A stretch of 64,000 nucleotides of DNA from Macrostomum lignano (GCA_002269645.1 NIVC01002215.1:1-64000), one strand, 5' to 3'; numbered from the stretch's first letter, positions 2,496 to 64,000 are shown. Numbers and translations are program-made. The notes: a model not told the origin generated them from the letters alone.

Positions 2496-5379
2496 TGTCT
2501 TGGGAATATTTTCTATTTAGGTGGAATGTCTGTTATCTTTATGAAAGCTATATTCTGTTGTCTGTTTGTTAATTTTAGAAAAAAAGATATTCATAGCAAA
2601 TATCATTGTCCATGACAATTTTACATTAATAAGGTGATTTTTTAAAGTGAAAAGGAATTGGTGTTTAAGAAAATGTGTTTTTTATTTTTTTCCATGAACT
2701 ATTTTTGCTCCTTGCTTATTGGGCGCCCCAAAGGGGGGCCGCACTAGATTGCTAGTTATCAACTAATATTTTGTCAACTAGATATATGGTAACTTAGCAA
2801 ATTGATTATAGTAGGGGTTCCGATGAGGTTTGTGAAATATGTCCCAAAACACGAAAAACGTGAAAATGTGTCCTACGTAGAATGAAGAAAAAAGGTACTA
2901 AATTACGAAATAAAGACAAACTGAAATATACAACAGAAACTAGACAAATTATACTTTCCAAAATGTGTTGAACCTTCTTATAGTATGACATAAGAAAAAA
3001 GTTATACGTGTCGAAAGTTACCACAAAAAGCGTCACAAATACGAAATGAAGCCAATCGTAAAAATGAGGGTTCATATGGCCAATTGAAATATCACCTTAA
3101 AGCGTGCTAGGAATAACAAATTAAATGAAAGGAATGAATAAAGGATATAGTAAAGCACAAATTTTGCAATAAAAAATGAAAAAAAATTTCTAAGGCCCTT
3201 TACTGTCAGTTGAAAATTTTCAACATGTTTTTCTTTGTGTCGTCATGAAAGGCCGCATTTTAAACAATTCAATTTGATATGCGGGTAACGTTTGCTCCAT
3301 TTTGCCAAAAAGAGGCATCTCGAATGACTTGCCACAAGGCAGCTAAGCCTCTGTTCCTTTATACATGTAAACTGCCATTAAGAAGACAATAAAGTTGATG
3401 TCTGTCTTCATAGATGCGGAGACGAGGAAATTAAACATGTTTAATATGCAGATTTCCATGCTGAATGACATGGTATAAGTCCCATTGCATAAAAGTTTGC
3501 CGCAAGGTCAATATTTAAGTTAACCTGCCAAAAAATGTACGTCTACTTGTAGTAGATAAATGGTAAATTTGCAGATTTGTTTCGTTTTTTTTATTTTGCT
3601 TTTTTCGATCAATATGATGTCTTTAATGAAACTGAATGCAAAGAGGGCATGTATAAGAAATATAAAAAATGCAAAAAATGACACCCAACATATTAAAATT
3701 GGATAAGGGACAAAAAAGTTATAAATAAAAGTATATGAAATATTGTACTTTTTGTGAAAAAAGGTCACAGGCCGTAATGCAAAAATGCCATAAGGAATTA
3801 CAAAATTTTTACAACTAAAAATGCTATAACTTTTTTATTCCTTGACAGAAATTAACAAGTGAGGCCATTTTGGATTTTGGTTGCAGAGATCTACTTAGCT
3901 GCCCAAAAATATCCAAGAATAAAAAATGTTTCAAAACCTCACTGGAACCCCTAATATAGCCATAGGCCTAGTTGCATAGCAAAAGTAGAAATTTAATATT
4001 AAATTCATTTAAAACATGTGACACATATTTCTTTGTCCTTAAAAATAATGTTTTCTATTTTTGGAAGTAATCTTACAATAATAGCCTTAATGCTAAGGCT
4101 AATGTCCATCTCTCCATTTAGGCCCTATTTCAATTTTAAAACTGCACATGTTTTAAATAATGTTATATAACACTTGTTAATATTAATAGCTAATAGGGCC
4201 TATATGGCCTATATATACTAAACAAATAATTTTCGCTTGAAGAAAATTCCAATTGACAAAATGCCAGTTGAAAAATGTCTGGTTAGGCCCTTAACAAGAT
4301 TAGGCCATGACTTAATTAAAATAAAGTTGCTTATTAGTTGTTACAAGAATAAATGTTAAGGCCTTTTGATTAAAAAAATAATGCTAAGATGCCAAATACT
4401 AGGGCCTACTAAAAAGGTTTTGATTTTGATACTGATGCTAATAAAAGAAGATGCTAGGCCTAATGACAATGTCTTAGGCTAGAATGCTAGCCTTCAGTTT
4501 TATTTAGGTTTAGCTTCAGCCTTTAGGCTGATGCTTTTTGCTTTAATATCCTTATCTTAGACTTAGGTTAGATAAGGTTGCAGCCTAATATTTGGGAAGC
4601 TAACAAATGAGTCATGAGTGAGAACTTGAGAAGCTAGGCTACCTAGGGCCTACCAGCCTATGTAAATCACTCATTGTAAAAATAAAGTTGATTCATGGTG
4701 GTAAATGCAAATTCATTATCTATGCTGAACTTTCCAAAGTAACTGCACACGAACAGCTACAGTTTAAATTGAGCTTGGAAGTTCATTGCAATTGAAGTTC
4801 ACTAGACTGAGAGTTCAACTACCAGAAAGTAAATTCTGCAGGAGCGAAATAGATAAATGACCACATGAGAGCTTAAAAATTACTTTGATGTCAATCGTCG
4901 AATAATAAAAGTATGGCAGTTCAGCTGAGTTAGTAACAGTCAATATGCCTAAGTCCAGGCTAGCTAAAACAGACAGGTGAAGAAAAAAAGAAAAGCCAGA
5001 TGAAAAGAAATAAAGAATTTCCGGATTTATACACGAATATCGTGAACGTAATATCAGGATGTTCTCTGACAATTCACGAAATGCACAATGAGTTAAGTAT
5101 TCACTGTTAAGTTTGTCTCTCACGACAGCCAAGGCCCACAGGCCCAACTCTCGCTATCGCCTTGCAATTCTGCAAAGTGGCAGCACTACCTACGTGCGCT
5201 ACTGAGAGCTACGAAAGAAATTAAGGCTTCCGAGAGAAGAGGCTCGAGACTTAATAAGGTTAAGCTTAAGTGCCTAAATCGGGAAGCAGAAAGCCATCTA
5301 ATTCACTTGTATCGAAGCTCTTCGCAGCTGTTCGTCCGCTAAGGACTTCCACACGAAATTACCATGGACAATTCGGACC

Positions 5380-52261: not shown

Positions 52262-52432
52262 ACATGTTGCCAAAATTCTATGCTTGAACTTTGCTTGCTT
52301 GCCGGTCTCTGGTAGCATTTCATGAAAAATTGCTTCATAAACTTTTGCTTGCACTTTAGAAAAGCACCTGTTTGCTTCATTTGGGGTTTAGAAGTCAAGA
52401 TATTGGAACTTTGACGCCAAAATGGATCTCAG

Positions 52433-52866
52433 TATCATCAGTACCATCAGTACTATCAGTACTATCAGTACTATCAGTATCATCCGTATCATCAGTATCA
52501 TCAGTATCATCACTATCATCAGTATCATCAGTACCATCAGTACTATCAGTACTATCAGTACTATCAGTACTATCAGTACTATCAGTACTATCAGTACTAT
52601 CAGTACTATCAGTACTATCAGTATCATCAGTATCATCAGTATCATCAGTATCATCAGTACTATCATCAGTATCATCAGTATCACCAGTATCATCAGTATC
52701 ATCAGTATCATCAGTATCATCAGTACTATCATCAGTATCATCAGTATCATCAGTATCACCAGTATCATCAGTATCATCAGTATCATCAGTACTATCATCA
52801 GTATCACCAGTATCATCAGTATCACCAGTATCATCAGTATCATCAGTATCATCACTATCATCAGTA
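52433..52866. repeat. 9-bp tandem repeat ATCAGTA(T/C)(C/T), about 45 copies
   Basis: Direct tandem repetition. It explains the SVSSVL / ISTISI ORFs. Confidence 0.97.
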
Positions 52867-53073
52867 TTCAGCTATTCTATGTTGCTCAGTGCTCATATTT
52901 ATCATGACTGAGCTGCTCTCAGAGCAGGAAGTATAAAAAATAAAAGTAAAGCGAATTAAGCAAAGTTTTGCTTCAGAGAAGCCAGCTCAACCATGCAAGC
53001 ACAAGCAGCCCGGATAATTGGCACTCTCTTTTATTGCACTCTACGGTGTACATGTACACCAGGTTCGAGTGAG

Positions 53074-53854
53074 TTACTCGAAGTTGGCTTTCAGGAAGCT
53101 CAGATTGTCGTACACGTTGCCGTAGATGGCCTGGTTGTTGCTGAAGTCGCCGCCGGACACGACACCGACCTGGCGGGGCTGGCCGCTCACGGTGATGAAC
53201 AGCGGGCCACCGCTGTCACCGTAGTACGGGCTGTTCGGGCTCATCGACTGGCAGACGGCGCCGATGAAGCGCCTGCAGCTCTCCACGGTGCTGGTCGCGT
53301 ACTTCAGCACGCCGGACCGCCTGTTCTCGTCCTGGCCGTAGCCAGCGATGGTGACGCTCTGGCCGACAGAGGTGGCGGCTTCGTGCAGAACGATCGGCTT
53401 GATCAAGTCGGTGAACTCGATATCAGCGGTGGTCTTCACAATGGCGATGTCGTCCCTGAGCAGTTTTGGGATTATTTTTGTGGCCTTTGAGTGCAGTAAT
53501 TGGTACTCTCTTGGAAGCTAGAATCTTAAACTGTACTCACTTGCCAACCGTGTTGCACTGCGTGTACTTCGGGTTGATGACCTGGCGGCTGGTGTCCAGG
53601 CTGTACCTCTTGGAGCCGGACTCGGGCCGGTTGCCCTGCACGGCGCCGAACAGAACAGAAGTCGGGCGAGTGCGGCACACGCAGTGGCCGGCGGTGAGGA
53701 CGGTGCGGCTGTCCAGGATGGAGGCTGAGCAGAAGCCGAGCCAGCCGGCGAACGGGAACTGGCCCTGTTCGGCGGTCTGGCCGTACAGGACGTACGGGTC
53801 GGGCATGGCCGAGGCTACGCCGAGGGCGCAGGCGACAATGATCAGCTTCAGCAT
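53074..53854 (-). CDS. Secreted S1 (chymotrypsin-fold) serine protease, cercarial-elastase-like, copy 1 (231 aa)
   Basis: Exons 53854-53541 and 53455-53074 (85-nt GT-AG intron, phase 2). Signal peptide MLKLIIVACALGVASA and catalytic triad LTAGHC / DDIAIV / GDSGGP. AATAAA at about 53036-53031 on the - strand. Confidence 0.95.
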
Positions 53855-54387
53855 GGCCTAAACGTGTGGTTTCAATGAATGGCTTCGATTTTTGGGCCGA
53901 ATATATAGTTAAGATCGGATGGGAGTTCAGCATGTGCTACCAGCTCTGGTCTGCTTATCGCTTCAGCTGTCCGTTGCAGAGCCCCTTGCCGTATGTGGAG
54001 TCGAGGCAAAGCACAGAGAACGTGACTCTGCGGACAAATGGAGCTAGGCGCTCATGCTGGCAGGCGTTGGAAGCGTGGCAGCGTGGGCGAAGCGATCGGA
54101 GTGGTGCTGGGACTTTGGCCCGCGTAGCGCAAGCTGACTGCAATGGTGGAAAGCTTTCAAAAGTCACGGACTGCTGGGTTACTGTCGACACTGTAGAGTC
54201 CACGCCAGTAGCAGCAGGGGAGTAACAGTTTCTTAACCCTATTAATATGTGATTATGCTGTATGCCACATTGAAACCATCAGTTCAAAACAGGAAAATAT
54301 TTGGATTTCTTCCCGATTTAGCGCGTTGATTGGCGGATCTTCTTGCATTGGGTTTCGCGTCGCAAAAATAGTGGTCTTTTGTGCGTC

Positions 54388-54830
54388 CATATGATGCTAG
54401 TGGTCCTTTGTTCGCTTCATATGATGCTAGTGGTCCTTTGTTCGCTTCATATGATGCTAGTGGTCCTTTGTTCGCTTCATATGATGCTAGTGGTCCTTTG
54501 TTCGCTTCATATGATGCTAGTGGTCCTTTGTTCGCTTCATATGATGCTAGTGGTCCTTTGTTCGCTTCATATGATGCTAGTGGTCCTTTGTTCGCTTCAT
54601 ATGATACTGGTGGTCCTTTGTTCGCTTCATATGATGCTAGTGGTCCTTTGTTCGCTTCATATGATACTGGTGGTCCTTTGTGCGTCCATATGATGCTAGT
54701 GGTCCTTTCATATAATACTACATCATTTCATATGGTCATGGGGTCATTTCATATCATACTGGTGGTCCTTTGTTCGCTTCTTTATGATACTGGTGGTCCT
54801 CTGTGCGCTCCATATGATACTTGTGGTCCT
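54388..54830. repeat. Minisatellite, 30-bp unit CATATGATGCTAGTGGTCCTTTGTTCGCTT, ~10 clean copies then degenerate
   Basis: Direct tandem repetition. It explains the ASYDASGPLF ORF. Confidence 0.95.
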
Positions 54831-55319
54831 TTGTACTCTCTCCACCGCTTGCATTGGCATCTGGATTCGCTGGCATTGCTACCAGTGATGCTGCTGCTGT
54901 TGCTGACAAGAAGAAAAAAGAAGCAAAGGCCGGTCGCATCCGTGCACAGGGCGCGAACGGGGTTGCATACCCAAACATATGAGTGCACATGGAGCACCCC
55001 CTATGCACGGTATCGAACGCTCCCGAGCTGAGTGCTCCCACCTGGAGAATGGCTGAAGAAGTTATTCCTCACCCCAGCAGCAGCGCATCAGTCTGTGACC
55101 AGCAGCCCCGTCACAGGTAGCAGGCATAGTCTCGGACGACGCCTTTTCGTGGTATTCCCGGATTCGCACGGAACCCGGCCCGTTGCGTACCAACGTGTCC
55201 TTATCTTTGACGTCTACCTCGCCCAGCACGCATGTTTTATCGTCGCTCTATATCTCCTGCTTCTGCTCCTGCCTACGTGCACCTCTACTCGTGCGCGTCT
55301 GCTCAACGATGGTGACATC

Positions 55320-57990
55320 AAACCGAAACAGGGTCCCTGTCGCTGCTGCTCTTTTGGATGCGGGATTCGCTCCGGTGCGCATCAACTCTTCTGCGCCGCC
55401 AACAACTGTAGTCAGCAGTGCCACCTGCAATTCAGACGCAACTGCAGCGGAGCCCCCCGCTACCGAGACGCACCTGGCTGGCTCGGCTCCCGCTATGCAC
55501 CCATCTGTCCGCCCACGGTAGCCGGTCGCCCGGTCTACTGCAGTAGCCACAGCGCTTCGACTACTGGCTTGAGAAACGCCTGCACGGGCTGCAACGTCTT
55601 GCCCGGCATATCCGCCGGTGTACTGCAGCTCCTGCAACTGCCGCTTTTACCAAAAATTTACCGCTCTGAGACAGTACGGCCTTCGACGCGCTATTGACTC
55701 TTCCTTCTGGTCCTGTCAGATCCAGAAGTGCTGCGCGACACCACTCGTAACTCAACCAACAAGCCGACTGATCATCCACGTGGCCTTCCACGCCCGCTCA
55801 CCCGTCTCTTCACTGCTGCTGATTGTCGTCTAGCCTTACCGAACTGCTCAACTGCATTGCATTTTCGCAGTTATCTATTATCAACATCTAAGAGAGCAAA
55901 CTCAAAGAGAACAACGCCATCCCTCACATCCCTGGCTAGTGGCTACTCTGTAGTCCGCCTTGATCGCCCATCTCAGGTCGGTTGCTGCGGGCTCGCCACC
56001 CTGGCACACGAACACCTTTCTGCTTCCTGGCCTTCCGGCACGTTGAACTCCCGCCGAGGACCTCGGCTGTCAGCTGTAAAATTATTTGCGTCCAAATCTT
56101 CATCGGCCCCAAAAATCTGTCACCGTTGACAAAATTTACCCCCCCTCCCTTGGCTCACGGCGCTGGCACTACCGTACCTCAAGACTGGAGCTCGCTCCTT
56201 GGCAACGCTGATTTTGGGCTGGGCGAATTTAATGCGCACGCTTCGCTCTAGGACCTCGCGGTGAGGCCCTGCTGGACTAGCGGGTCAGCTGCGATCAGGT
56301 CCTACTGAACAACAGCTCTTCCACCTGAGTTAACCGCAAGACAGGCGGTCTCAGATCCCCAGAGGTTAGCTGGTGCATCAGCGCCTGGCACTTTAGCGGA
56401 ATGGGCGGCGATCGCCTCCCCGCTGCGTCTTCGGACTGACATGCAGCGCCTGGCATGAGAAATGTGAATTGTTGACCTCAGATGACCTCGGCTTCGACCA
56501 CTACTAGATTATCATCCAAATCTCCTGTCCTGCTCAAAAAATCCACTAGCCGGCCCGCAAACACTCACGTGGAAAAATCTCAGCTAAACGCCCGACCGGC
56601 CCGTGGCTCATTCACAACGCTAGGGCGGCTGTCAAGCGCTACAAGCTGCTTCGTCGCCAGCTGCCGGCCAGCGTGCCGAGTGACTTCAGACCTGCATGGT
56701 CGCTGCGCTCGCGCTCCAGGGAGGCAAGAATCAACTTTGGAATGAGTTTCTGACGAACGCGGACCTCTGTTAGGACCCTCTAAAGCGTGACGAATCATAC
56801 GTTCCCTCAGCTGCTCCCTTGACAGCCAGTCCACCAACGAAGCTTTGATTCATCACCGGCCGGACTCTCTCCGACAATACGGGCATAAGTTCAATTCGGA
56901 GGCCTTCATCAAGGAATGCACGGCCGTCATTCCTACGACAAGGCGGAGAGAACCGACGTCAGAAAACCAAAAAGCTGCTTCGCTCCCCCAGTGTCGATGG
57001 TGAGAGTTGCTCTCCGATCTCCTTTGACGAGCTCAAGCAAGCCAATGGGGCCGAAGGTCTGGGTGATAGTTCGCTTCGCTTCCTGAAGGATACTCGTACC
57101 TTGGCACTCTCGGAGCTGCTCTTAATCTTCAATCTGTCTTTCTACAGTGGTAGCGTTGGTATCTGCGCCGCGCCATCATCCTTTCCCTGCTCAAACGCGA
57201 AAAACCTGCTAAAAACTCCTATCAGCCGGTAGTTTAGCCTCATGCATGGCTTAGCTCTTGGAACGGATTCTAGTGGCCCGCTTCAGCTACCTCTCAGAGT
57301 CCCCTGGAGGATCGCCCTCCAACAGGCAGGCTTCCGTACTCTCCGGTCGAGGACCACATTGTCGCATTCGTCCTGGGCATCAGTGATACATTCCAGCTCT
57401 CCGCCATGCAATAATCGGTCATGGCCATCCCTACTAGTCTAAGACCTACGACAAGGTCTGGCGTGAGCGCCTTTTCTGTACTATGATCTCCAAGAACGTT
57501 TCCATGTAGGTCGTTCGATGGCGCTACAGCTTTCTCCAGAATGAACGACAAGCCTGCGTCCGCCTTAAAGGCGCCTCCATCAGCTAAATTAAGGCTGCTG
57601 AACTGAGGCCTTCCTCAGGGTTCGGTGCTGACTCCTCCCAGCTGTTTCTGTTCTTCATTGATACTATTATCAAGTCGATCTTGATGGATCGGGCACTCAC
57701 GTGTATGCCGAAGACGTCGCAATTCTCAGCCAAGGAGAACAACCCAGAGCCGTGCGTAAGCGCCTGGGGCGGGGCCGTCTTCGCTGTTGCTACCTGGAGC
57801 AATGCCAATAAGAGGGTCCTCAGTCGAACGAGCCTTCGGTTGAGCGCCTTCTCCACTGCTACTGCCGAGGCCTGGTTCCAATCACGCATCAACATCAACA
57901 ATCAAGTTCTGTCGTGTAACGACTCGCCATGCTTCCTGGTAGTGCACCTGGAGCGCACCATAGCTTTCTCCGCCAAGTTATTGTAGTTGG
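55320..57990 (+). mobile_element. Decayed non-LTR retrotransposon (Cys-rich finger, APE endonuclease, RT)
   Basis: Cys/His-rich PHD-like stretch (about 55335-55450). APE motifs ESKLKEN...GYSVVRLDR...GLATL (55885-56010) and GEFNAH (about 56220-56240). RT motifs LIFNLS, QAGFR (about 57323), GLPQGSVL (about 57607) and YAED for YADD (about 57704). Many stops and frameshifts. Confidence 0.8.
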
Positions 57991-58764
57991 GTGTCGCTTG
58001 GCTCGCCGCCCGCTCATTTGGAAGTTTTTTTTATGAAAATCACAATCAACTCTTAGCCGACAAAAAGCAGAAATAACTGAAGAACAAACGTTTCAAATAC
58101 GAGAAATGACTAGTTGAGATCTTCACGCACTGCCACTGAAGTTACCATGAAGCTACTTGTTATGCCCTGAAAAATCGCTCCCCCACCGTTGCACGTTCTT
58201 TCAACGTTTGCCTTGATTTTTAACAGTTACACATATGATCTTACATGTAACTTCCAACCAACGTTACTAAAGACCTCAGCTTTCCTTTTCTTTCTTTAAG
58301 ACTCGCAATGCATATGCCAAATTAAATACGAATAGATCAAATAAATTATGACAATAAGGTTCATTCCACAGCACTACTTAAGCTACTTAGCTACAGCTCA
58401 CGCTCTGAGGTGAAGTCTAGCCGCGAAATACACGGGCACGCTTCTGTCAAACCCGCACCTCAGCAACGGCACTCTCAGGATCAACAGTTCCGGTTTTTCC
58501 AGTTCTTCCGGCTGGTCGTGCTTGCTTTCAATTGCTTCAAAGACACGTTCATTTGAATACCGAATGCAGCCCAGTTGCCCTTCATTTCAGGTCCTCATAC
58601 GGTCCGGCTTAGGAAAAAAACTTGAAACGAACCGGACTGAAGCCCGGGTGCAGTTTTATAAGCACTTCCCCGAAACTTCACAGAAGGTTAATTTCTAACA
58701 AAAGTTTTTACGAGCGTTGTACATGTGTACATTGACCCGCATGCAATCCGAGTGATATACTAAA

Positions 58765-58834
58765 CCTAACCCTAACCCTAACCCTAACCCTAACCCTAAC
58801 CCTAACCCTAACCCTAACCCTAACCCTAACCCTA
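58765..58834. repeat. Interstitial telomeric repeat (CCCTAA)n, ~11-12 perfect copies
   Basis: Perfect CCCTAA/TTAGGG hexamers embedded in non-telomeric DNA. Confidence 0.95.
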
Positions 58835-59131
58835 GTACATGTAGATGTATACACTCACCTACATATAATAATCCGATGACGTAAGTTAGTTCTTCAGCGC
58901 TAAAACGTTTTGGTCAACCGATTCTGTATTCGCACTACTATGGAATGCGTGGATAATCCAGCATATTTTTCAGCCTGTGACTTATGCGTTCTACTCACAA
59001 ATAAAACAAGGTGATGTAGGAAAATTCAAAAATATATGATCGCACCTGCAGCGTTTAAAGCTGCTTAGCATTGCAACTCGTACTCGTGTTTATTTATTAG
59101 AACACAGCATGCAGCACATTGCACCATAGGC

Positions 59132-59926
59132 TCAGCCCATGAGCCCGCGGATGAAGCTCAGATTGTCGTACACGTTGCCGTAGATGGCCTGGTTGTTGGT
59201 GAAGTCGCCGCCGGACACGACACCGACTTGGCGGGGCTGGCTGCTCACGGTGACGAACAGCGGGCCACCGCTGTCACCGTAGTACGGGCTGTTCGGGCTC
59301 ATCGACTGGCAGACGGCACCAGTGAAACGCCTGCAGGCAGCCACGGTGTTACTGGCGTACTTCAGTACGCCGGACCGCCTGTTCTCGTCCTGGCCGTAGC
59401 CAGCGATGGTGATGCTCTGGCCGACGGAGGTGGCGGATGTGTGCAAAGTGATTGCGCCGATGACAGAATTGAAGGAGATCGCCGTGGTGGTCTTCAGGAT
59501 GGCGATGTCGTCCCTGTGGGTCAGAGGTATTTTGCCAATGAGTTTTTATCTAGTGATAACACCTAAAGCGGCAGAACTAACCAGCAAAACAGCGTCTGTG
59601 TGGAGTACTCACTTGCCAATGGTGCCGCAGCTAGTGTAGCGTGGATGAATGACCTGCCGGCTGGTGTCCAGACTGTACCTCCGGGAGCCCGACTCCGGGT
59701 TGTTGCCCTGCACTGCGCCGAACAGAACGGAGGTCGGCTTGGAGCGGCACACGCAGTGACCGGCGGTGAGGACGGTGCGGCTGTCCAGGATGGAGGCGGA
59801 GCAGGAACCGAGCCACGCGGCGAACGGAAACTGGCCCTGACTGGCAGTCCTACCGTACAGGACGTACGGGTCAGGCATGGCCGACGCCAGGCCGAGGGCG
59901 CAGGCGACAATGAGCAGCTTCAGCAT
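59132..59926 (-). CDS. Secreted S1 serine protease, cercarial-elastase-like, copy 2 (231 aa)
   Basis: Exons 59926-59613 and 59513-59132 (99-nt GT-AG intron at the same position and phase as copy 1). Signal peptide and intact H/D/S triad. About 82% identical to copy 1 by manual alignment (42 differences in 231 aa). AATAAA at about 59098-59090 on the - strand. Confidence 0.95.
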
Positions 59927-62810: not shown

Positions 62811-64000
62811 TTAGACCTTATAACAAACAGGTTTACGAGGCCGCAAATCATACGAGCTTTGGGGCTGGAGAGTCTCATCTCCAGAACTCAGCGGGGAGTC
62901 ACAGTCAGTCACCTCAGGTTCACGCAGCTCCGAGTCAGAGCCAGCCTTGGCACCCTGAATCGATAGCCCAGCCTGATCCTCGGATCCAGCCGCCTCGGTC
63001 AGCCGCCGATCGGCCTCCGCCTCCGGGCGGCAGCTCCATTGGTTTGCGTGCGCCATCCGCAGTCCACCGTCTGGTAGGTCAGCTGAGGTCACCAGAGCTG
63101 TGTTCCGGCCGTGCTGCACGATGAACTTGGCCGGAACCGGAGCCGTGCCAGGCCGTGCCGGCGTCCCCACATGAGAATGTCCGGCGAGCTGGAACGATTC
63201 CCGCTAGGCCTGCTGGTGCGAATGGTTAGGAGCAATTTCTGCAGGAACTGGTCAAATGGGACCACTTTCGTCCACGTCTTCAGCCCGCCTTTGAGACTCC
63301 TCGCCAACCGCTCAGCCTGCCCGTTCGATGCCGGATGGTACGGTGGGGTGTGCATCTCCTGGCAGCCGACACTGTTCAGCCACTGCGAGACTCTTTCCGA
63401 CCTGAACTCGGGCGCATTATCCGACACTAGCGTCCGAGGCACTCCATTTCTGGCGAACACCGCTCTCAGCACTCTCAGCACACTGCCCGCAGACCTGTCT
63501 GGGACCTGGACAGCTTCTGGCCAACCCGAGTATGCATCAGACAGCAACAGTAGCAAGCCCACTCCTGGCACCTCACAGTGGTCCATGTGGACCCGGGACC
63601 ACGGCTCGCTCTCGGATGGCCAGATGTCAATTTTCCGCTGAACCACCGGCCGTCTTTCAGCGCACAGCTGACACCGCTCAACAAACTGACGGACATCGCG
63701 ATCCAGTCCAGGCCACCAGAACTCCTTAGACACATGGGCCTTCGTATTTTCCGCGCTCGGGTGCACCTCATCATGCGCGGTCTCCACAATGCGCCGCCGG
63801 AGAATGGTCGGAGGCACCACCCTGGTACCGTGGATGACCAGCCCGTTCTCCACAGACAACGCTTCCCGACACGCTTTGTACGGCCGCTCCAGCTGAGAGA
63901 CCTGACCCCACCGGCCTGTCCTGATTCTCTGCTGGAGTCTTTGAAGCAGTGAACACCGGGAAGTACTTTCTCTCAGCTCCTCCACGGTAACCAAGCCTCC
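62811..64000 (-). mobile_element. Ty3/gypsy pol 3' part (integrase); runs off the window end
   Basis: HHCC finger (AHDEVHP...CQLC), D-D-E core (VHMDH, LVSDNAPEF, SNGQAER) and FWWPGL motif. A frameshift after LMWGRR leads to the C-terminal tail ending YDLRPRKPVCYKV* at 62811. Confidence 0.93.

What the first reader, a model, noticed from the sequence alone, without database searches (positions are those of the whole stretch)
53074..59926. Tandem pair of proteases carrying the schistosome cercarial-elastase signature
Seen in both copies: FPF..(W/F)L...C...LTAGHCVC (extra Cys two residues after the catalytic His-Cys), P-x-Y-x-x-C before the catalytic Asp, GYG-x-D-x-N, G-x-LK followed by CR, P-x-x-GDSGGPL with no Cys191 (so no 191-220 disulfide), only six Cys in the mature enzyme, and a non-tryptic activation site (DPY|VLYG). 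From my recollection of Schistosoma mansoni cercarial elastase (FPFIAFL, LTAGHCVC, PGYMPSC, GYGRDDN, GGILKK, MECR, PAPGDSGGPL, activation WL|IRSG), these features are shared and are atypical of ordinary trypsins and chymotrypsins. Cercarial elastase is the skin-invasion enzyme generally treated as a schistosome specialisation. If this genome is a free-living flatworm, the pair could represent the ancestral family from which it was recruited.
Basis: partly seen in the sequence, partly recalled or inferred. Interest (0 to 1): 0.8.

Follow-up and report, generated by a model that had tools for sequence, protein, structure and literature searches.

The report
Flatworm proteases sharing cercarial-elastase cysteine signature
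Two neighbouring genes of the free-living flatworm Macrostomum lignano encode small secreted chymotrypsin-type proteases with the same rare cysteine and motif signature as the schistosome skin-invasion enzyme cercarial elastase, which suggests (but does not prove) that this enzyme lineage is older than parasitism.

Summary
Two intact two-exon genes lie in tandem on the minus strand (53074-53854 and 59132-59926). Each encodes a 231-aa secreted S1A serine-protease precursor, and the two are 83% identical. They match GenBank PAA59894.1 and PAA59895.1, both "hypothetical protein", Macrostomum lignano.

The signature has seven states: His-Cys-x-Cys, a Cys before Asp102, no Cys191, G-Y/F-G, GYGxD, and Gly and Lys of G-x-L-K. 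It is rare. Of 422 other S1 domains, 273 have none of these states. Only a small, mostly environmental family reaches 5 or more.

The Macrostomum genes belong firmly to that family. CE joins the same clade when outgroups are identified animal and fungal S1s (bootstrap 89%, ML placement 0.999). Support collapses when a few unidentified long-branch metagenomic sequences are added. Overall similarity, intron positions and S1-pocket residues give no extra support.

The idea is partly anticipated. Horn et al. 2014 described SmSP5 as a "missing link" with this disulfide pattern, and I could not fetch that sequence. A moth protein also has the pattern.

Verdict: partly supported. These are new free-living members of a known, rare S1 subfamily, not cercarial elastases.

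The parts
53074..53854 (-). Copy 1 gene (= GenBank PAA59894.1, BOX15_Mlig032521g2): ATG to stop, 231-aa S1A protease precursor
   Evidence: Searches give the gene model. 100% identical to P0001 (accession). Pfam Trypsin E 2.6e-27. AlphaFold2 pLDDT 91.2.
53541..53854 (-). Copy 1 exon 1. Encodes signal peptide (residues 1-16), putative propeptide MPDPY (17-21), Val22 as the new N-terminus, Cys42, His57, Cys58, Cys60 and Cys100
   Evidence: Ends in GGCAA|GTGAGT.
53456..53540 (-). Copy 1 intron: 85 nt, GTGAGT...CAG, phase 2, just before the catalytic-Asp motif DDIAIV
   Evidence: The relative on locus L002 has an intron at the same position. The SmCE gene on L001 does not.
53074..53455 (-). Copy 1 exon 2. 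Encodes Asp107 (chymotrypsin Asp102), GYGQDEN, GVLK, Cys166, Cys173, Ser180 (position 189), GDSGGP with Ser186 (Ser195), and the stop codon
53030..53035 (-). AATAAA polyadenylation signal, about 40 nt after the copy 1 stop codon
59132..59926 (-). Copy 2 gene (= GenBank PAA59895.1, BOX15_Mlig024526g2): 231-aa paralogue, 83% aa identity to copy 1
   Evidence: Pfam Trypsin E 2.9e-26. dN/dS against copy 1 is 0.42.
59613..59926 (-). Copy 2 exon 1
59514..59612 (-). Copy 2 intron: 99 nt, GTGAGT...CAG, same position and phase as in copy 1
   Evidence: Intron identity to copy 1 is only about 52%, against 84% for the CDS.
59132..59513 (-). Copy 2 exon 2, including the stop codon
59089..59098 (-). Overlapping AATAAA signals after the copy 2 stop codon

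Best explanation
These are two tandemly duplicated, intact and expressed-looking genes of Macrostomum lignano. Each encodes a small secreted zymogen of a chymotrypsin-fold (S1A) serine endopeptidase.

Inferred working:
- A 16-residue signal peptide (ending ...VASA) is removed.
- A 5-residue propeptide (MPDPY) is cut after Tyr21, a chymotryptic and possibly autocatalytic site.
- Val22 becomes the new N-terminus and pairs with the Asp next to the catalytic Ser.
- His57, Asp107 and Ser186 (chymotrypsin 57/102/195) carry out catalysis.
- The S1 pocket is Ser189/Gly216/Ala226. This predicts a preference for medium to large hydrophobic P1 residues.
- Three disulfides are predicted: 42-58, 168-182, and an unusual one from the Cys three residues after the catalytic His to a Cys in the loop before Asp102. 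The latter replaces the usual 191-220 bond.

The pair belongs to a rare 'His-Cys-x-Cys' S1 subfamily. Its other members here are about a dozen environmental eukaryotic cDNAs or contigs of unknown taxon, a moth 'ovochymase-like' protein and, most probably, the schistosomatid cercarial elastases. According to the literature, the SmSP5 'missing link' cluster belongs there too.

The pair is therefore a free-living-flatworm representative of the lineage that produced cercarial elastase. It is not itself a cercarial elastase. The most likely role is an extracellular digestive or gland-secreted protease, but the tissue is unknown.
For: Shown here:
- Gene models have canonical splice sites and polyA signals.
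- Both copies hit Pfam Trypsin at E about 1e-27.
- The AlphaFold2 model has pLDDT 91.2 and pTM 0.86. Its best PDB matches are enteropeptidase light chain, chymotrypsin and crayfish trypsin, with TM about 0.8.
- dN/dS between the copies is 0.42. The CDS is 84% identical while the intron and flanks are close to random.
- Both proteins are exact matches to M. lignano GenBank entries on one 119,807-bp contig.

Subfamily membership:
- All the best single-domain relatives in an exhaustive search of 1.84 billion representatives carry Cys60 plus the pre-Asp Cys and lack Cys191.
- The flatworm proteins score 209 bits on an HMM of that family built without them, against 166 on an outgroup HMM.
- ML placement of the flatworm clade inside the family has weight 0.90-1.0.

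Link to CE:
- The seven-state signature is shared: 7/7 against 6-7/7, and 0-1 in 358 of 422 other domains (motif frequencies).
- Cys60 goes with absence of Cys191 in 31 of 33 domains, against 20 of 402 without Cys60.
- SmCE's best named non-schistosomatid hit is the Macrostomum protein.
- With 54 named animal and 4 fungal S1s as outgroups, a clade holding CE, Macrostomum and only Cys60-type sequences has NJ bootstrap 89%. CE placement weight on that clade is 0.999, or 0.94 with all Cys columns removed. The pre-Asp Cys column was not in this matrix at all.
- Horn et al. 2014 describe the same disulfide pattern as uniting SmSP5 and CE (PMC3967958).
Against: - The CE link depends on sampling. With unidentified long-branch metagenomic or bacterial sequences included (P0116, P0142, P0019, P0140), bootstrap falls to 12% and ML placement puts CE on the P0116 edge with weight 0.84.
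- CE scores no better on the Cys60-family HMM (about 118 bits) than on a general outgroup HMM (about 120 bits).
- In the forward search, more than 285 representatives outscore CE.
- The intron sits in a different place. SmCE has introns after about aa 76 and aa 184 and none before Asp102.
- S1-pocket residues differ: Ser189/Ala226 here, against Leu or Ile at 189 and Leu226 in SmCE (PMC3317910).
- The phylogenetics used my own NJ and ML-placement code, with a rate matrix derived from Gonnet 1992 and a fixed NJ backbone. It is not a full ML or Bayesian search.
- The activation site, disulfide pairing, specificity and site of expression are inferred, not observed.
Confidence: 0.7

Rival explanations
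1. These are ordinary invertebrate chymotrypsin-like (digestive) proteases. Their resemblance to cercarial elastase is convergent, or is the retention of an old state, and there is no specific common ancestry with CE.
For: - CE shows no excess whole-sequence similarity to the Cys60 family over generic S1s.
- CE ranks about 60th or lower among per-domain hits of the flatworm protein.
- Bootstrap is 12% and ML placement goes to P0116 when unidentified long-branch sequences are included.
- Intron positions differ.
- A moth protein has the same Cys pattern, so it can occur outside flatworms.
Against: - Seven independent minority character states co-occur only in CE and this family among 438 domains.
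- Grouping persists at 71-76% bootstrap and 0.94 placement weight after all Cys-rich columns are removed.
- SmCE's best named hit outside schistosomatids is the Macrostomum protein.
Confidence: 0.2
2. The pair are co-orthologues of the trematode SmSP5 'missing-link' protease specifically. Cercarial elastase would then be a later, fast-evolving offshoot of an SP5-like gene within trematodes or schistosomatids, so the right name would be 'SP5-like' rather than 'CE-like'.
For: - Horn et al. 2014 report that SmSP5 has six Cys with the same three predicted disulfides, a non-Asp residue at 189, a very short N-terminal extension and a less divergent sequence than CE. They also report orthologues in S. 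japonicum and Clonorchis (PMC3967958).
- The flatworm proteins are likewise short and far less divergent than CE.
Against: - Not tested. The SmSP5 sequence could not be obtained with the tools.
- SmSP5 did not appear among the 120 best hits of the family profile.
- SmSP5 is reported to lack a signal peptide, whereas the flatworm proteins have a clear one.
Confidence: 0.35
3. One or both copies are decaying duplicates (pseudogenes) without function.
For: None found. dN/dS of 0.42 is only moderately low.
Against: - Both reading frames are intact.
- All catalytic residues and all six Cys are kept.
- Splice sites are canonical GT..AG and polyA signals are present.
- The CDS is 84% identical while the intron and flanks have diverged to near-random.
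- Near-identical copies are kept on other contigs of the assembly.
Confidence: 0.03

Closest known systems
Schistosoma mansoni cercarial elastase (CERC_SCHMA / SmCE; schistosomatid CE family, MEROPS S1)
   Same: - S1A fold.
- Six Cys in the same arrangement: 42-58, 168-182, and His+3 Cys to a pre-Asp102 Cys. No 191-220 or 136-201 bond.
- LTAGHCVC, FPF, P-x-Y...C, GYGxD, G-x-LK...CR and PGDSGGPL-type motifs without Cys191.
- Hydrophobic residue at the activation site (Leu in CE, Tyr here).
- Tandem or inverted gene duplicates.

   Different: - Only about 31% identity.
- CE has insertions of about 10 residues in the 99 loop and about 6 after GYGRD.
- The CE pocket is Leu or Ile at 189 and Leu226; here it is Ser189 and Ala226 (PMC3317910).
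- The CE gene has 3 exons with introns elsewhere.
- CE is expressed in the cercarial acetabular glands of a parasite, a life stage Macrostomum does not have.
SmSP5 and its trematode orthologues ('trematode SP clade 5', Horn et al. 2014, PMC3967958)
   Same: As described in the paper: six Cys with the CE-type disulfide pattern, loss of 136-201 and 191-220, a non-tryptic residue at 189, a very short N-terminal extension, and an intermediate position between CE and ordinary invertebrate chymotrypsins.
   Different: [quoted passage not shown]
Unnamed environmental 'His-Cys-x-Cys' S1 family (P0005, P0006, P0007, P0170, P0174, P0177, P0188 and others; polyadenylated metatranscriptome cDNAs and metagenome contigs, including the two-exon homologue on L002)
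   Same: - 34-40% identity (47-61% for L002).
- Same length (220-265 aa) and the same signature (5-7 of 7 states).
- L002 has its intron at the same position.

   Different: - Most have a tryptic Arg at the activation site.
- Several lack the 168-182 pair.
- The source organisms are unknown.
Invertebrate chymotrypsin, brachyurin and collagenase-type S1A proteases (fire-ant chymotrypsin 1EQ9, crayfish trypsin 2F91, Schistocerca brachyurin-like)
   Same: - Best solved-structure sequence matches (E 1.7e-10) and best named non-flatworm hits.
- Small single-domain secreted enzymes with six Cys.
   Different: - They keep Cys191-Cys220 and lack Cys60 and the pre-Asp Cys.
- They have GWG rather than GYG.
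- They score 0-2 on the seven-state signature.
Plodia interpunctella 'ovochymase-like' XP_064292667.1 (P0197)
   Same: Both of its S1 domains have His-Cys-x-Cys, a Cys before Asp102, no Cys191 and GYG. It groups with the Cys60 clade.
   Different: It is a two-domain insect protein and lacks the GYGxD and G-x-LK states (signature strings CVYTKKG and CEYTNRA).

Membership tests
Peptidase family S1A (chymotrypsin fold) | Significant match to the trypsin domain model over its full length | tested here: met
   PF00089 E 2.6e-27 and 2.9e-26, profile positions 4-211/213 of 220.
Peptidase family S1A (chymotrypsin fold) | Catalytic triad His57, Asp102, Ser195 in order, with the TAxHC, D-I-A and GDSGGP motifs (oxyanion Gly193, Asp194) | tested here: met
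   LTAGHC, DDIAI and GDSGGP are present in both copies. These columns are invariant in an 84-sequence alignment.
Peptidase family S1A (chymotrypsin fold) | Two-beta-barrel fold | tested here: met
   AlphaFold2 pLDDT 91.2, pTM 0.86. Foldseek TM about 0.8 to enteropeptidase, chymotrypsin and crayfish trypsin.
Peptidase family S1A (chymotrypsin fold) | Zymogen activation that exposes an Ile/Val N-terminus | tested here: inconclusive
   Alignment puts Val22 (VLYG) at the position of Ile16, after Tyr21. No protein data.
Cercarial elastase (schistosomatid CE clade) | Six-Cys pattern: 42-58, 168-182, His+3 Cys to a pre-Asp102 Cys; no 191-220 or 136-201 | tested here: met
   The pattern is described for CE in PMC3967958. 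Actual disulfide bonding was not tested.
Cercarial elastase (schistosomatid CE clade) | Sequence falls inside the tight CE cluster (members are 49-100% identical to SmCE) | tested here: not met
   31% identity to SmCE. The CE clade is monophyletic in 100% of bootstraps without the flatworm genes.
Cercarial elastase (schistosomatid CE clade) | Hydrophobic S1 pocket (Leu/Ile at 189, Gly216, Leu226) | tested here: not met
   Ser189, Gly216 and Ala226 by alignment. CE residues and PMC3317910.
Cercarial elastase (schistosomatid CE clade) | CE-specific loop insertions (99 loop; after GYGRD) | tested here: not met
   Absent in alignment A1.
Cercarial elastase (schistosomatid CE clade) | Gene structure of SmCE (three exons; introns after about aa 76 and about aa 184) | tested here: not met
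   The flatworm genes have one intron, before Asp102.
Cercarial elastase (schistosomatid CE clade) | Expression in cercarial acetabular glands and elastin/skin-matrix degradation | not testable with these tools
   No expression or enzymatic data. Macrostomum has no cercaria.
CE + SP5 lineage ('trematode SP clade 5', Horn et al. 2014) in the broad sense | Shared disulfide pattern and a non-tryptic residue at 189 | tested here: met
   Definition from PMC3967958.
CE + SP5 lineage ('trematode SP clade 5', Horn et al. 2014) in the broad sense | Phylogenetic grouping with CE to the exclusion of other S1 proteases | tested here: inconclusive
   With identified animal and fungal outgroups: 89% NJ bootstrap and 0.999 ML placement weight. 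With unidentified long-branch sequences: 12%, and placement on P0116.
CE + SP5 lineage ('trematode SP clade 5', Horn et al. 2014) in the broad sense | Grouping with SmSP5 and its orthologues | not tested
   The SmSP5 sequence (KF939306) could not be retrieved. Protein searches were exhausted and the supplements hold images only.
Environmental 'His-Cys-x-Cys' S1 family (unnamed) | Higher score on the family profile than on a general S1 profile, and phylogenetic placement inside the family | tested here: met
   209 against 166 bits. Placement weight 0.95, 0.90 and 1.0.

The most novel reading that the evidence does not exclude
The Macrostomum pair (with its environmental relatives) is the free-living pro-orthologue of the whole CE/SP5 lineage. 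The schistosome skin-invasion protease would then descend from a secreted chymotrypsin-like enzyme with the unusual 60-to-99-loop disulfide. That enzyme would already have existed at the base of rhabditophoran flatworms, and possibly of protostomes. It would have been lost in planarians and cestodes and later recruited and accelerated in Neodermata. This would contradict the published statement that the CE clade lacks free-living representatives.
Probability: 0.45. Interest if true: 0.55.

Novelty: new member of a known kind. Interest (0 to 1): 0.4.

Why it matters
Cercarial elastase is the enzyme that lets Schistosoma mansoni larvae penetrate human skin. Its origin has been unclear because it is so divergent.

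Published work bridges it only to a trematode 'missing link', SmSP5 (PMC3967958). Other papers report no counterpart in the free-living flatworms examined, namely Schmidtea and Bothrioplana (PMC4976874, PMC9860727).

If the Macrostomum genes are true relatives, the enzyme lineage predates parasitism. That would also give it a tractable, free-living, transgenic model in which its ancestral tissue, substrates and unusual disulfide could be studied.

If the resemblance is convergent, it is still a clean example of a rare alternative disulfide architecture in the chymotrypsin fold.

Tried and rejected
- **Shared intron positions.** These were tried as independent evidence. The SmCE gene (L001) has introns after about aa 76 and aa 184, and the flatworm intron before Asp102 is not shared. 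Only the L002 homologue shares it. This gives no support and is not decisive against.
- **Profile-level similarity.** CE scores the same on the Cys60-family HMM as on an outgroup HMM, so overall similarity carries no signal.
- **NJ bootstrap and ML placement on the first 95-sequence set.** This set included unidentified metagenomic and bacterial long branches. CE was unstable and was attracted to P0116, P0142 and P0019. Correcting the pre-Asp Cys column did not change this.
- **P0116.** It carries CE-like motifs but lies on a dense-gene metagenome scaffold of unknown origin. I treated it as unresolved, not as a CE relative.
- **Obtaining SmSP5.** It was not among the listed hits of the family-profile search, no paper prints it, and the supplements are images and primers.
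- **Taxon of the environmental relatives.** They are only anonymous JGI, ENA, TARA or Logan contigs.
- **Literature on the gene identifiers.** Nothing was found for them or for Macrostomum serine proteases.
- **Pseudogene reading.** Rejected.
- **A third copy in the window.** None.


Full report
**What is in the sequence**

The interval holds two genes on the minus strand.

| | Exon 1 | Intron | Exon 2 (with stop) |
|---|---|---|---|
| Copy 1 | 53854-53541 | 53540-53456, 85 nt, GTGAGT..CAG, phase 2 | 53455-53074 |
| Copy 2 | 59926-59613 | 59612-59514, 99 nt, same position and phase | 59513-59132 |

- Each gene encodes 231 residues and is followed by AATAAA within about 40 nt of the stop.
- The proteins are 83% identical. 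No third copy is present in the window.
- Between the copies the CDS is 84% identical, while the intron and flanks are near random. dN/dS is 0.42. Both copies are therefore maintained by selection.
- Copy 1 is identical to PAA59894.1 (BOX15_Mlig032521g2) and copy 2 to PAA59895.1 (BOX15_Mlig024526g2). These are adjacent 'hypothetical proteins' on one 119,807-bp contig of Macrostomum lignano.
The genes are already in GenBank, but only as uncharacterised S1-domain proteins.

**Check of the observation**

I wrote SmCE from memory as a search query.

There are two corrections. The P-x-Y...C spacing is one residue longer in SmCE. The activation site DPY|VLYG is an inference from alignment.

**What the proteins are**

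- Both match Pfam Trypsin at E about 1e-27 over the whole domain.
- The AlphaFold2 model of copy 1 is confident (pLDDT 91.2, pTM 0.86). It superposes on enteropeptidase light chain, chymotrypsin and crayfish trypsin at TM about 0.8.
- The triad (His57, Asp107, Ser186 in precursor numbering) and GDSGGP are intact.
- By alignment the specificity pocket is Ser189/Gly216/Ala226. That is chymotrypsin-like, not tryptic.
- The signal peptide ends in VASA. Five residues (MPDPY) precede Val22, which aligns with the activating N-terminus of the relatives: R|V or R|I in the environmental homologues, L|I in CE.
- The inferred mechanism is a secreted zymogen, activated by a chymotryptic and possibly autocatalytic cut after Tyr21. 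The mature enzyme would carry three disulfides, one of them unusual. These steps are inferred, not shown.

**Is the signature rare?**

Yes.

Of those 33, 31 lack Cys191. Only 20 of the 402 domains without Cys60 lack Cys191. Fisher p is 1.5e-31, though the sequences are not independent.
- On the 95-sequence alignment, G-Y/F-G occurs in all CE, Macrostomum and family members but in 24% of others. The Asp of GYGxD occurs in 100% of CE and Macrostomum and 75% of the environmental members, against 9% of others. The Gly and Lys of G-x-L-K occur in 100% of CE and Macrostomum sequences, against 17% and 12% of others.
- A seven-state score over 438 domains aligned to one HMM gives the following:

| Group | Score out of 7 |
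|---|---|
| Macrostomum | 7 |
| CE | 6 (7 in alignment A1, where the CE loop insertion is accommodated) |
| 273 of 422 other domains | 0 |
| 85 of 422 other domains | 1 |
| 15 of 422 other domains | 5 or more |

- Of the 15 that reach 5 or more, all but P0284 carry Cys60 and belong to one small family.
- The pattern is not flatworm-exclusive, however. Both domains of a Plodia interpunctella 'ovochymase-like' protein have it.

**Nearest relatives**

An exhaustive HMMER search of 1.84 billion representatives gave 7519 hits. Re-scored per domain, the best were single-domain proteins of 220-265 aa at 34-40% identity. They are P0005, P0006, P0170, P0174, P0177, P0183, P0188 and P0007. All carry the signature.

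- All come from anonymous metatranscriptome or metagenome contigs. Two that I read are polyadenylated cDNAs.
- One metagenome contig (L002) carries a two-exon homologue with the intron at the same site. Its two exons are 47% and 61% identical to copy 1.
- The flatworm proteins score 209 bits on an HMM of this family built without them, against 166 on an outgroup HMM.
- ML placement puts them inside the family with weight 0.90-1.0.
- Membership of this unnamed family is solid.

**Relation to cercarial elastase**

Evidence for a link:
- The shared signature described above.
- In the search started from SmCE, after the schistosomatid CEs came two unnamed sequences. The next hits were the two Macrostomum proteins, at E 8.5e-9 and 31% identity over 86% of the query. 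The CE group included Schistosoma, Heterobilharzia and Trichobilharzia.
- P0003 is the top non-CE hit of SmCE1a and SmCE2b among about 350 S1s.
- With outgroups restricted to 54 named animal and 4 fungal S1s plus bovine trypsin and chymotrypsin, a clade containing CE, Macrostomum and only Cys60-type sequences has 89% NJ bootstrap, or 71% without Cys-rich columns.
- In the same data set my ML placement puts CE on Cys60-clade edges with weight 0.999, or 0.94 without Cys-rich columns. It used a Gonnet-derived rate matrix, four gamma categories and an NJ backbone with ML branch lengths.
- The pre-Asp Cys column had been trimmed out of that matrix.

Evidence against a link:
- In the first data set, which included unidentified long-branch sequences, support was 12%. 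CE was drawn to P0116, P0142 and P0019, with placement weight 0.84 on P0116.
- CE scores equally on the family HMM and the outgroup HMM.
- CE ranks far down the forward search.
- The SmCE gene has three exons with introns elsewhere.
- The CE pocket is Leu or Ile at 189 and Leu226 (PMC3317910).

On balance common ancestry is the better explanation of the seven-state signature, but it is not proven.

**Comparison with what is published**

- Horn et al. 2014 (PMC3967958) described SmSP5 and its S. japonicum and Clonorchis orthologues as a 'missing link' to CE. SmSP5 has six Cys, the same extra disulfide, loss of 136-201 and 191-220, and Gly189. In their tree CE+SP5 sits next to invertebrate chymotrypsins.
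- Caña-Bozada et al. 2023 (PMC9860727) found CE-clade S1s in monogeneans and Fasciola. They found none in cestodes or in the two free-living species they sampled.
- Goupil et al. 2016 (PMC4976874) found no SmCE homologue in Schmidtea.
- I found no paper linking Macrostomum to this lineage.
- The concept is therefore known. What is new is a free-living macrostomorph member, together with an environmental family around it.
- I could not obtain SmSP5. This leaves open whether the pair is closer to SP5 than to CE.

**Verdict**

These are not cercarial elastases. They fail the CE tests on sequence cluster, pocket residues, loop insertions and gene structure. They are new members of the rare S1 subfamily to which CE most probably belongs.

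Interest is moderate. The finding bears on the pre-parasitic origin of an important invasion enzyme and offers a tractable model. It extends an existing idea, and its key phylogenetic step still needs a proper analysis that includes SmSP5.

Noticed in passing
window 58760-58834: A perfect-looking interstitial telomere-type repeat, (CTAACC)12.5 (the reverse complement of TTAGGG units), about 300 bp downstream of the copy 2 stop codon and between the two protease genes.
   Followed up: no
window 52429-52867 and 54369-54834: Two minisatellites flank copy 1: a 9-bp unit (TCAGTATCA) x48 just 3' of the gene, and a 30-bp unit x15.5 about 500 bp 5' of it. They account for the long repetitive ORFs listed there.
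   Followed up: no
window 63089-63994 (-): A 301-aa ORF with retroviral-type integrase domains (Integrase_H2C2 E 2.8e-17, rve E 6.1e-13). It is probably part of an LTR retrotransposon at the window edge.
   Followed up: no
window 1-34000 versus 34000-64000: Marked compositional heterogeneity: about 30-43% GC for most of the first half, against 45-59% in the second half, where the protease genes lie. The protease CDSs have GC3 of 0.85-0.91.
   Followed up: no
L001 (S. mansoni NW_017386107.1) 3001-4356 (+) and 7354-5739 (-): Two cercarial elastase genes lie head to head about 1.4 kb apart, each with three exons. CE genes are thus also locally duplicated, but in inverted orientation.
   Followed up: partly
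P0135, P0310, P0311 (Trichobilharzia szidati), P0313 (T. regenti), P0309 (Heterobilharzia americana): Clear CE-family proteins are annotated in avian schistosome genomes. Ingram et al. 2012 state that avian-specific schistosomes use another class of protease for invasion (PMC3317910).
   Followed up: no
P0197 = XP_064292667.1, Plodia interpunctella 'ovochymase-like': A two-domain moth S1 protein in which both domains have His-Cys-x-Cys, a Cys before Asp102 and no Cys191. It groups with the Cys60 clade.
   Followed up: partly
L007 351-1499 (P0116, metagenome scaffold WANG22-1_SAMN08714533): A 382-aa protein with a Cys-rich tail and several CE-like strings (SLIRDPTPV against WLIRSGEPV, PGYNPS against PGYMPS, NGILNK against GGILKK, LTAGHCVC). 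It keeps Cys191 and sits on a gene-dense scaffold of unknown origin. It attracts CE in trees.
   Followed up: partly
P0395 (UniRef A0A1I8GDB5, M. lignano, 954 aa): A 954-aa M. lignano S1 gene model sits in the same 90% cluster as copy 1. It is probably a fused model of several tandem protease genes from an earlier annotation.
   Followed up: no
P0013 / P0314 (TARA ocean metagenome, L006): Members of the Cys60 family in which the first Gly of the catalytic motif GDSGG is replaced, giving SDSGG. The catalytic Ser is kept, so they may or may not be active.
   Followed up: no
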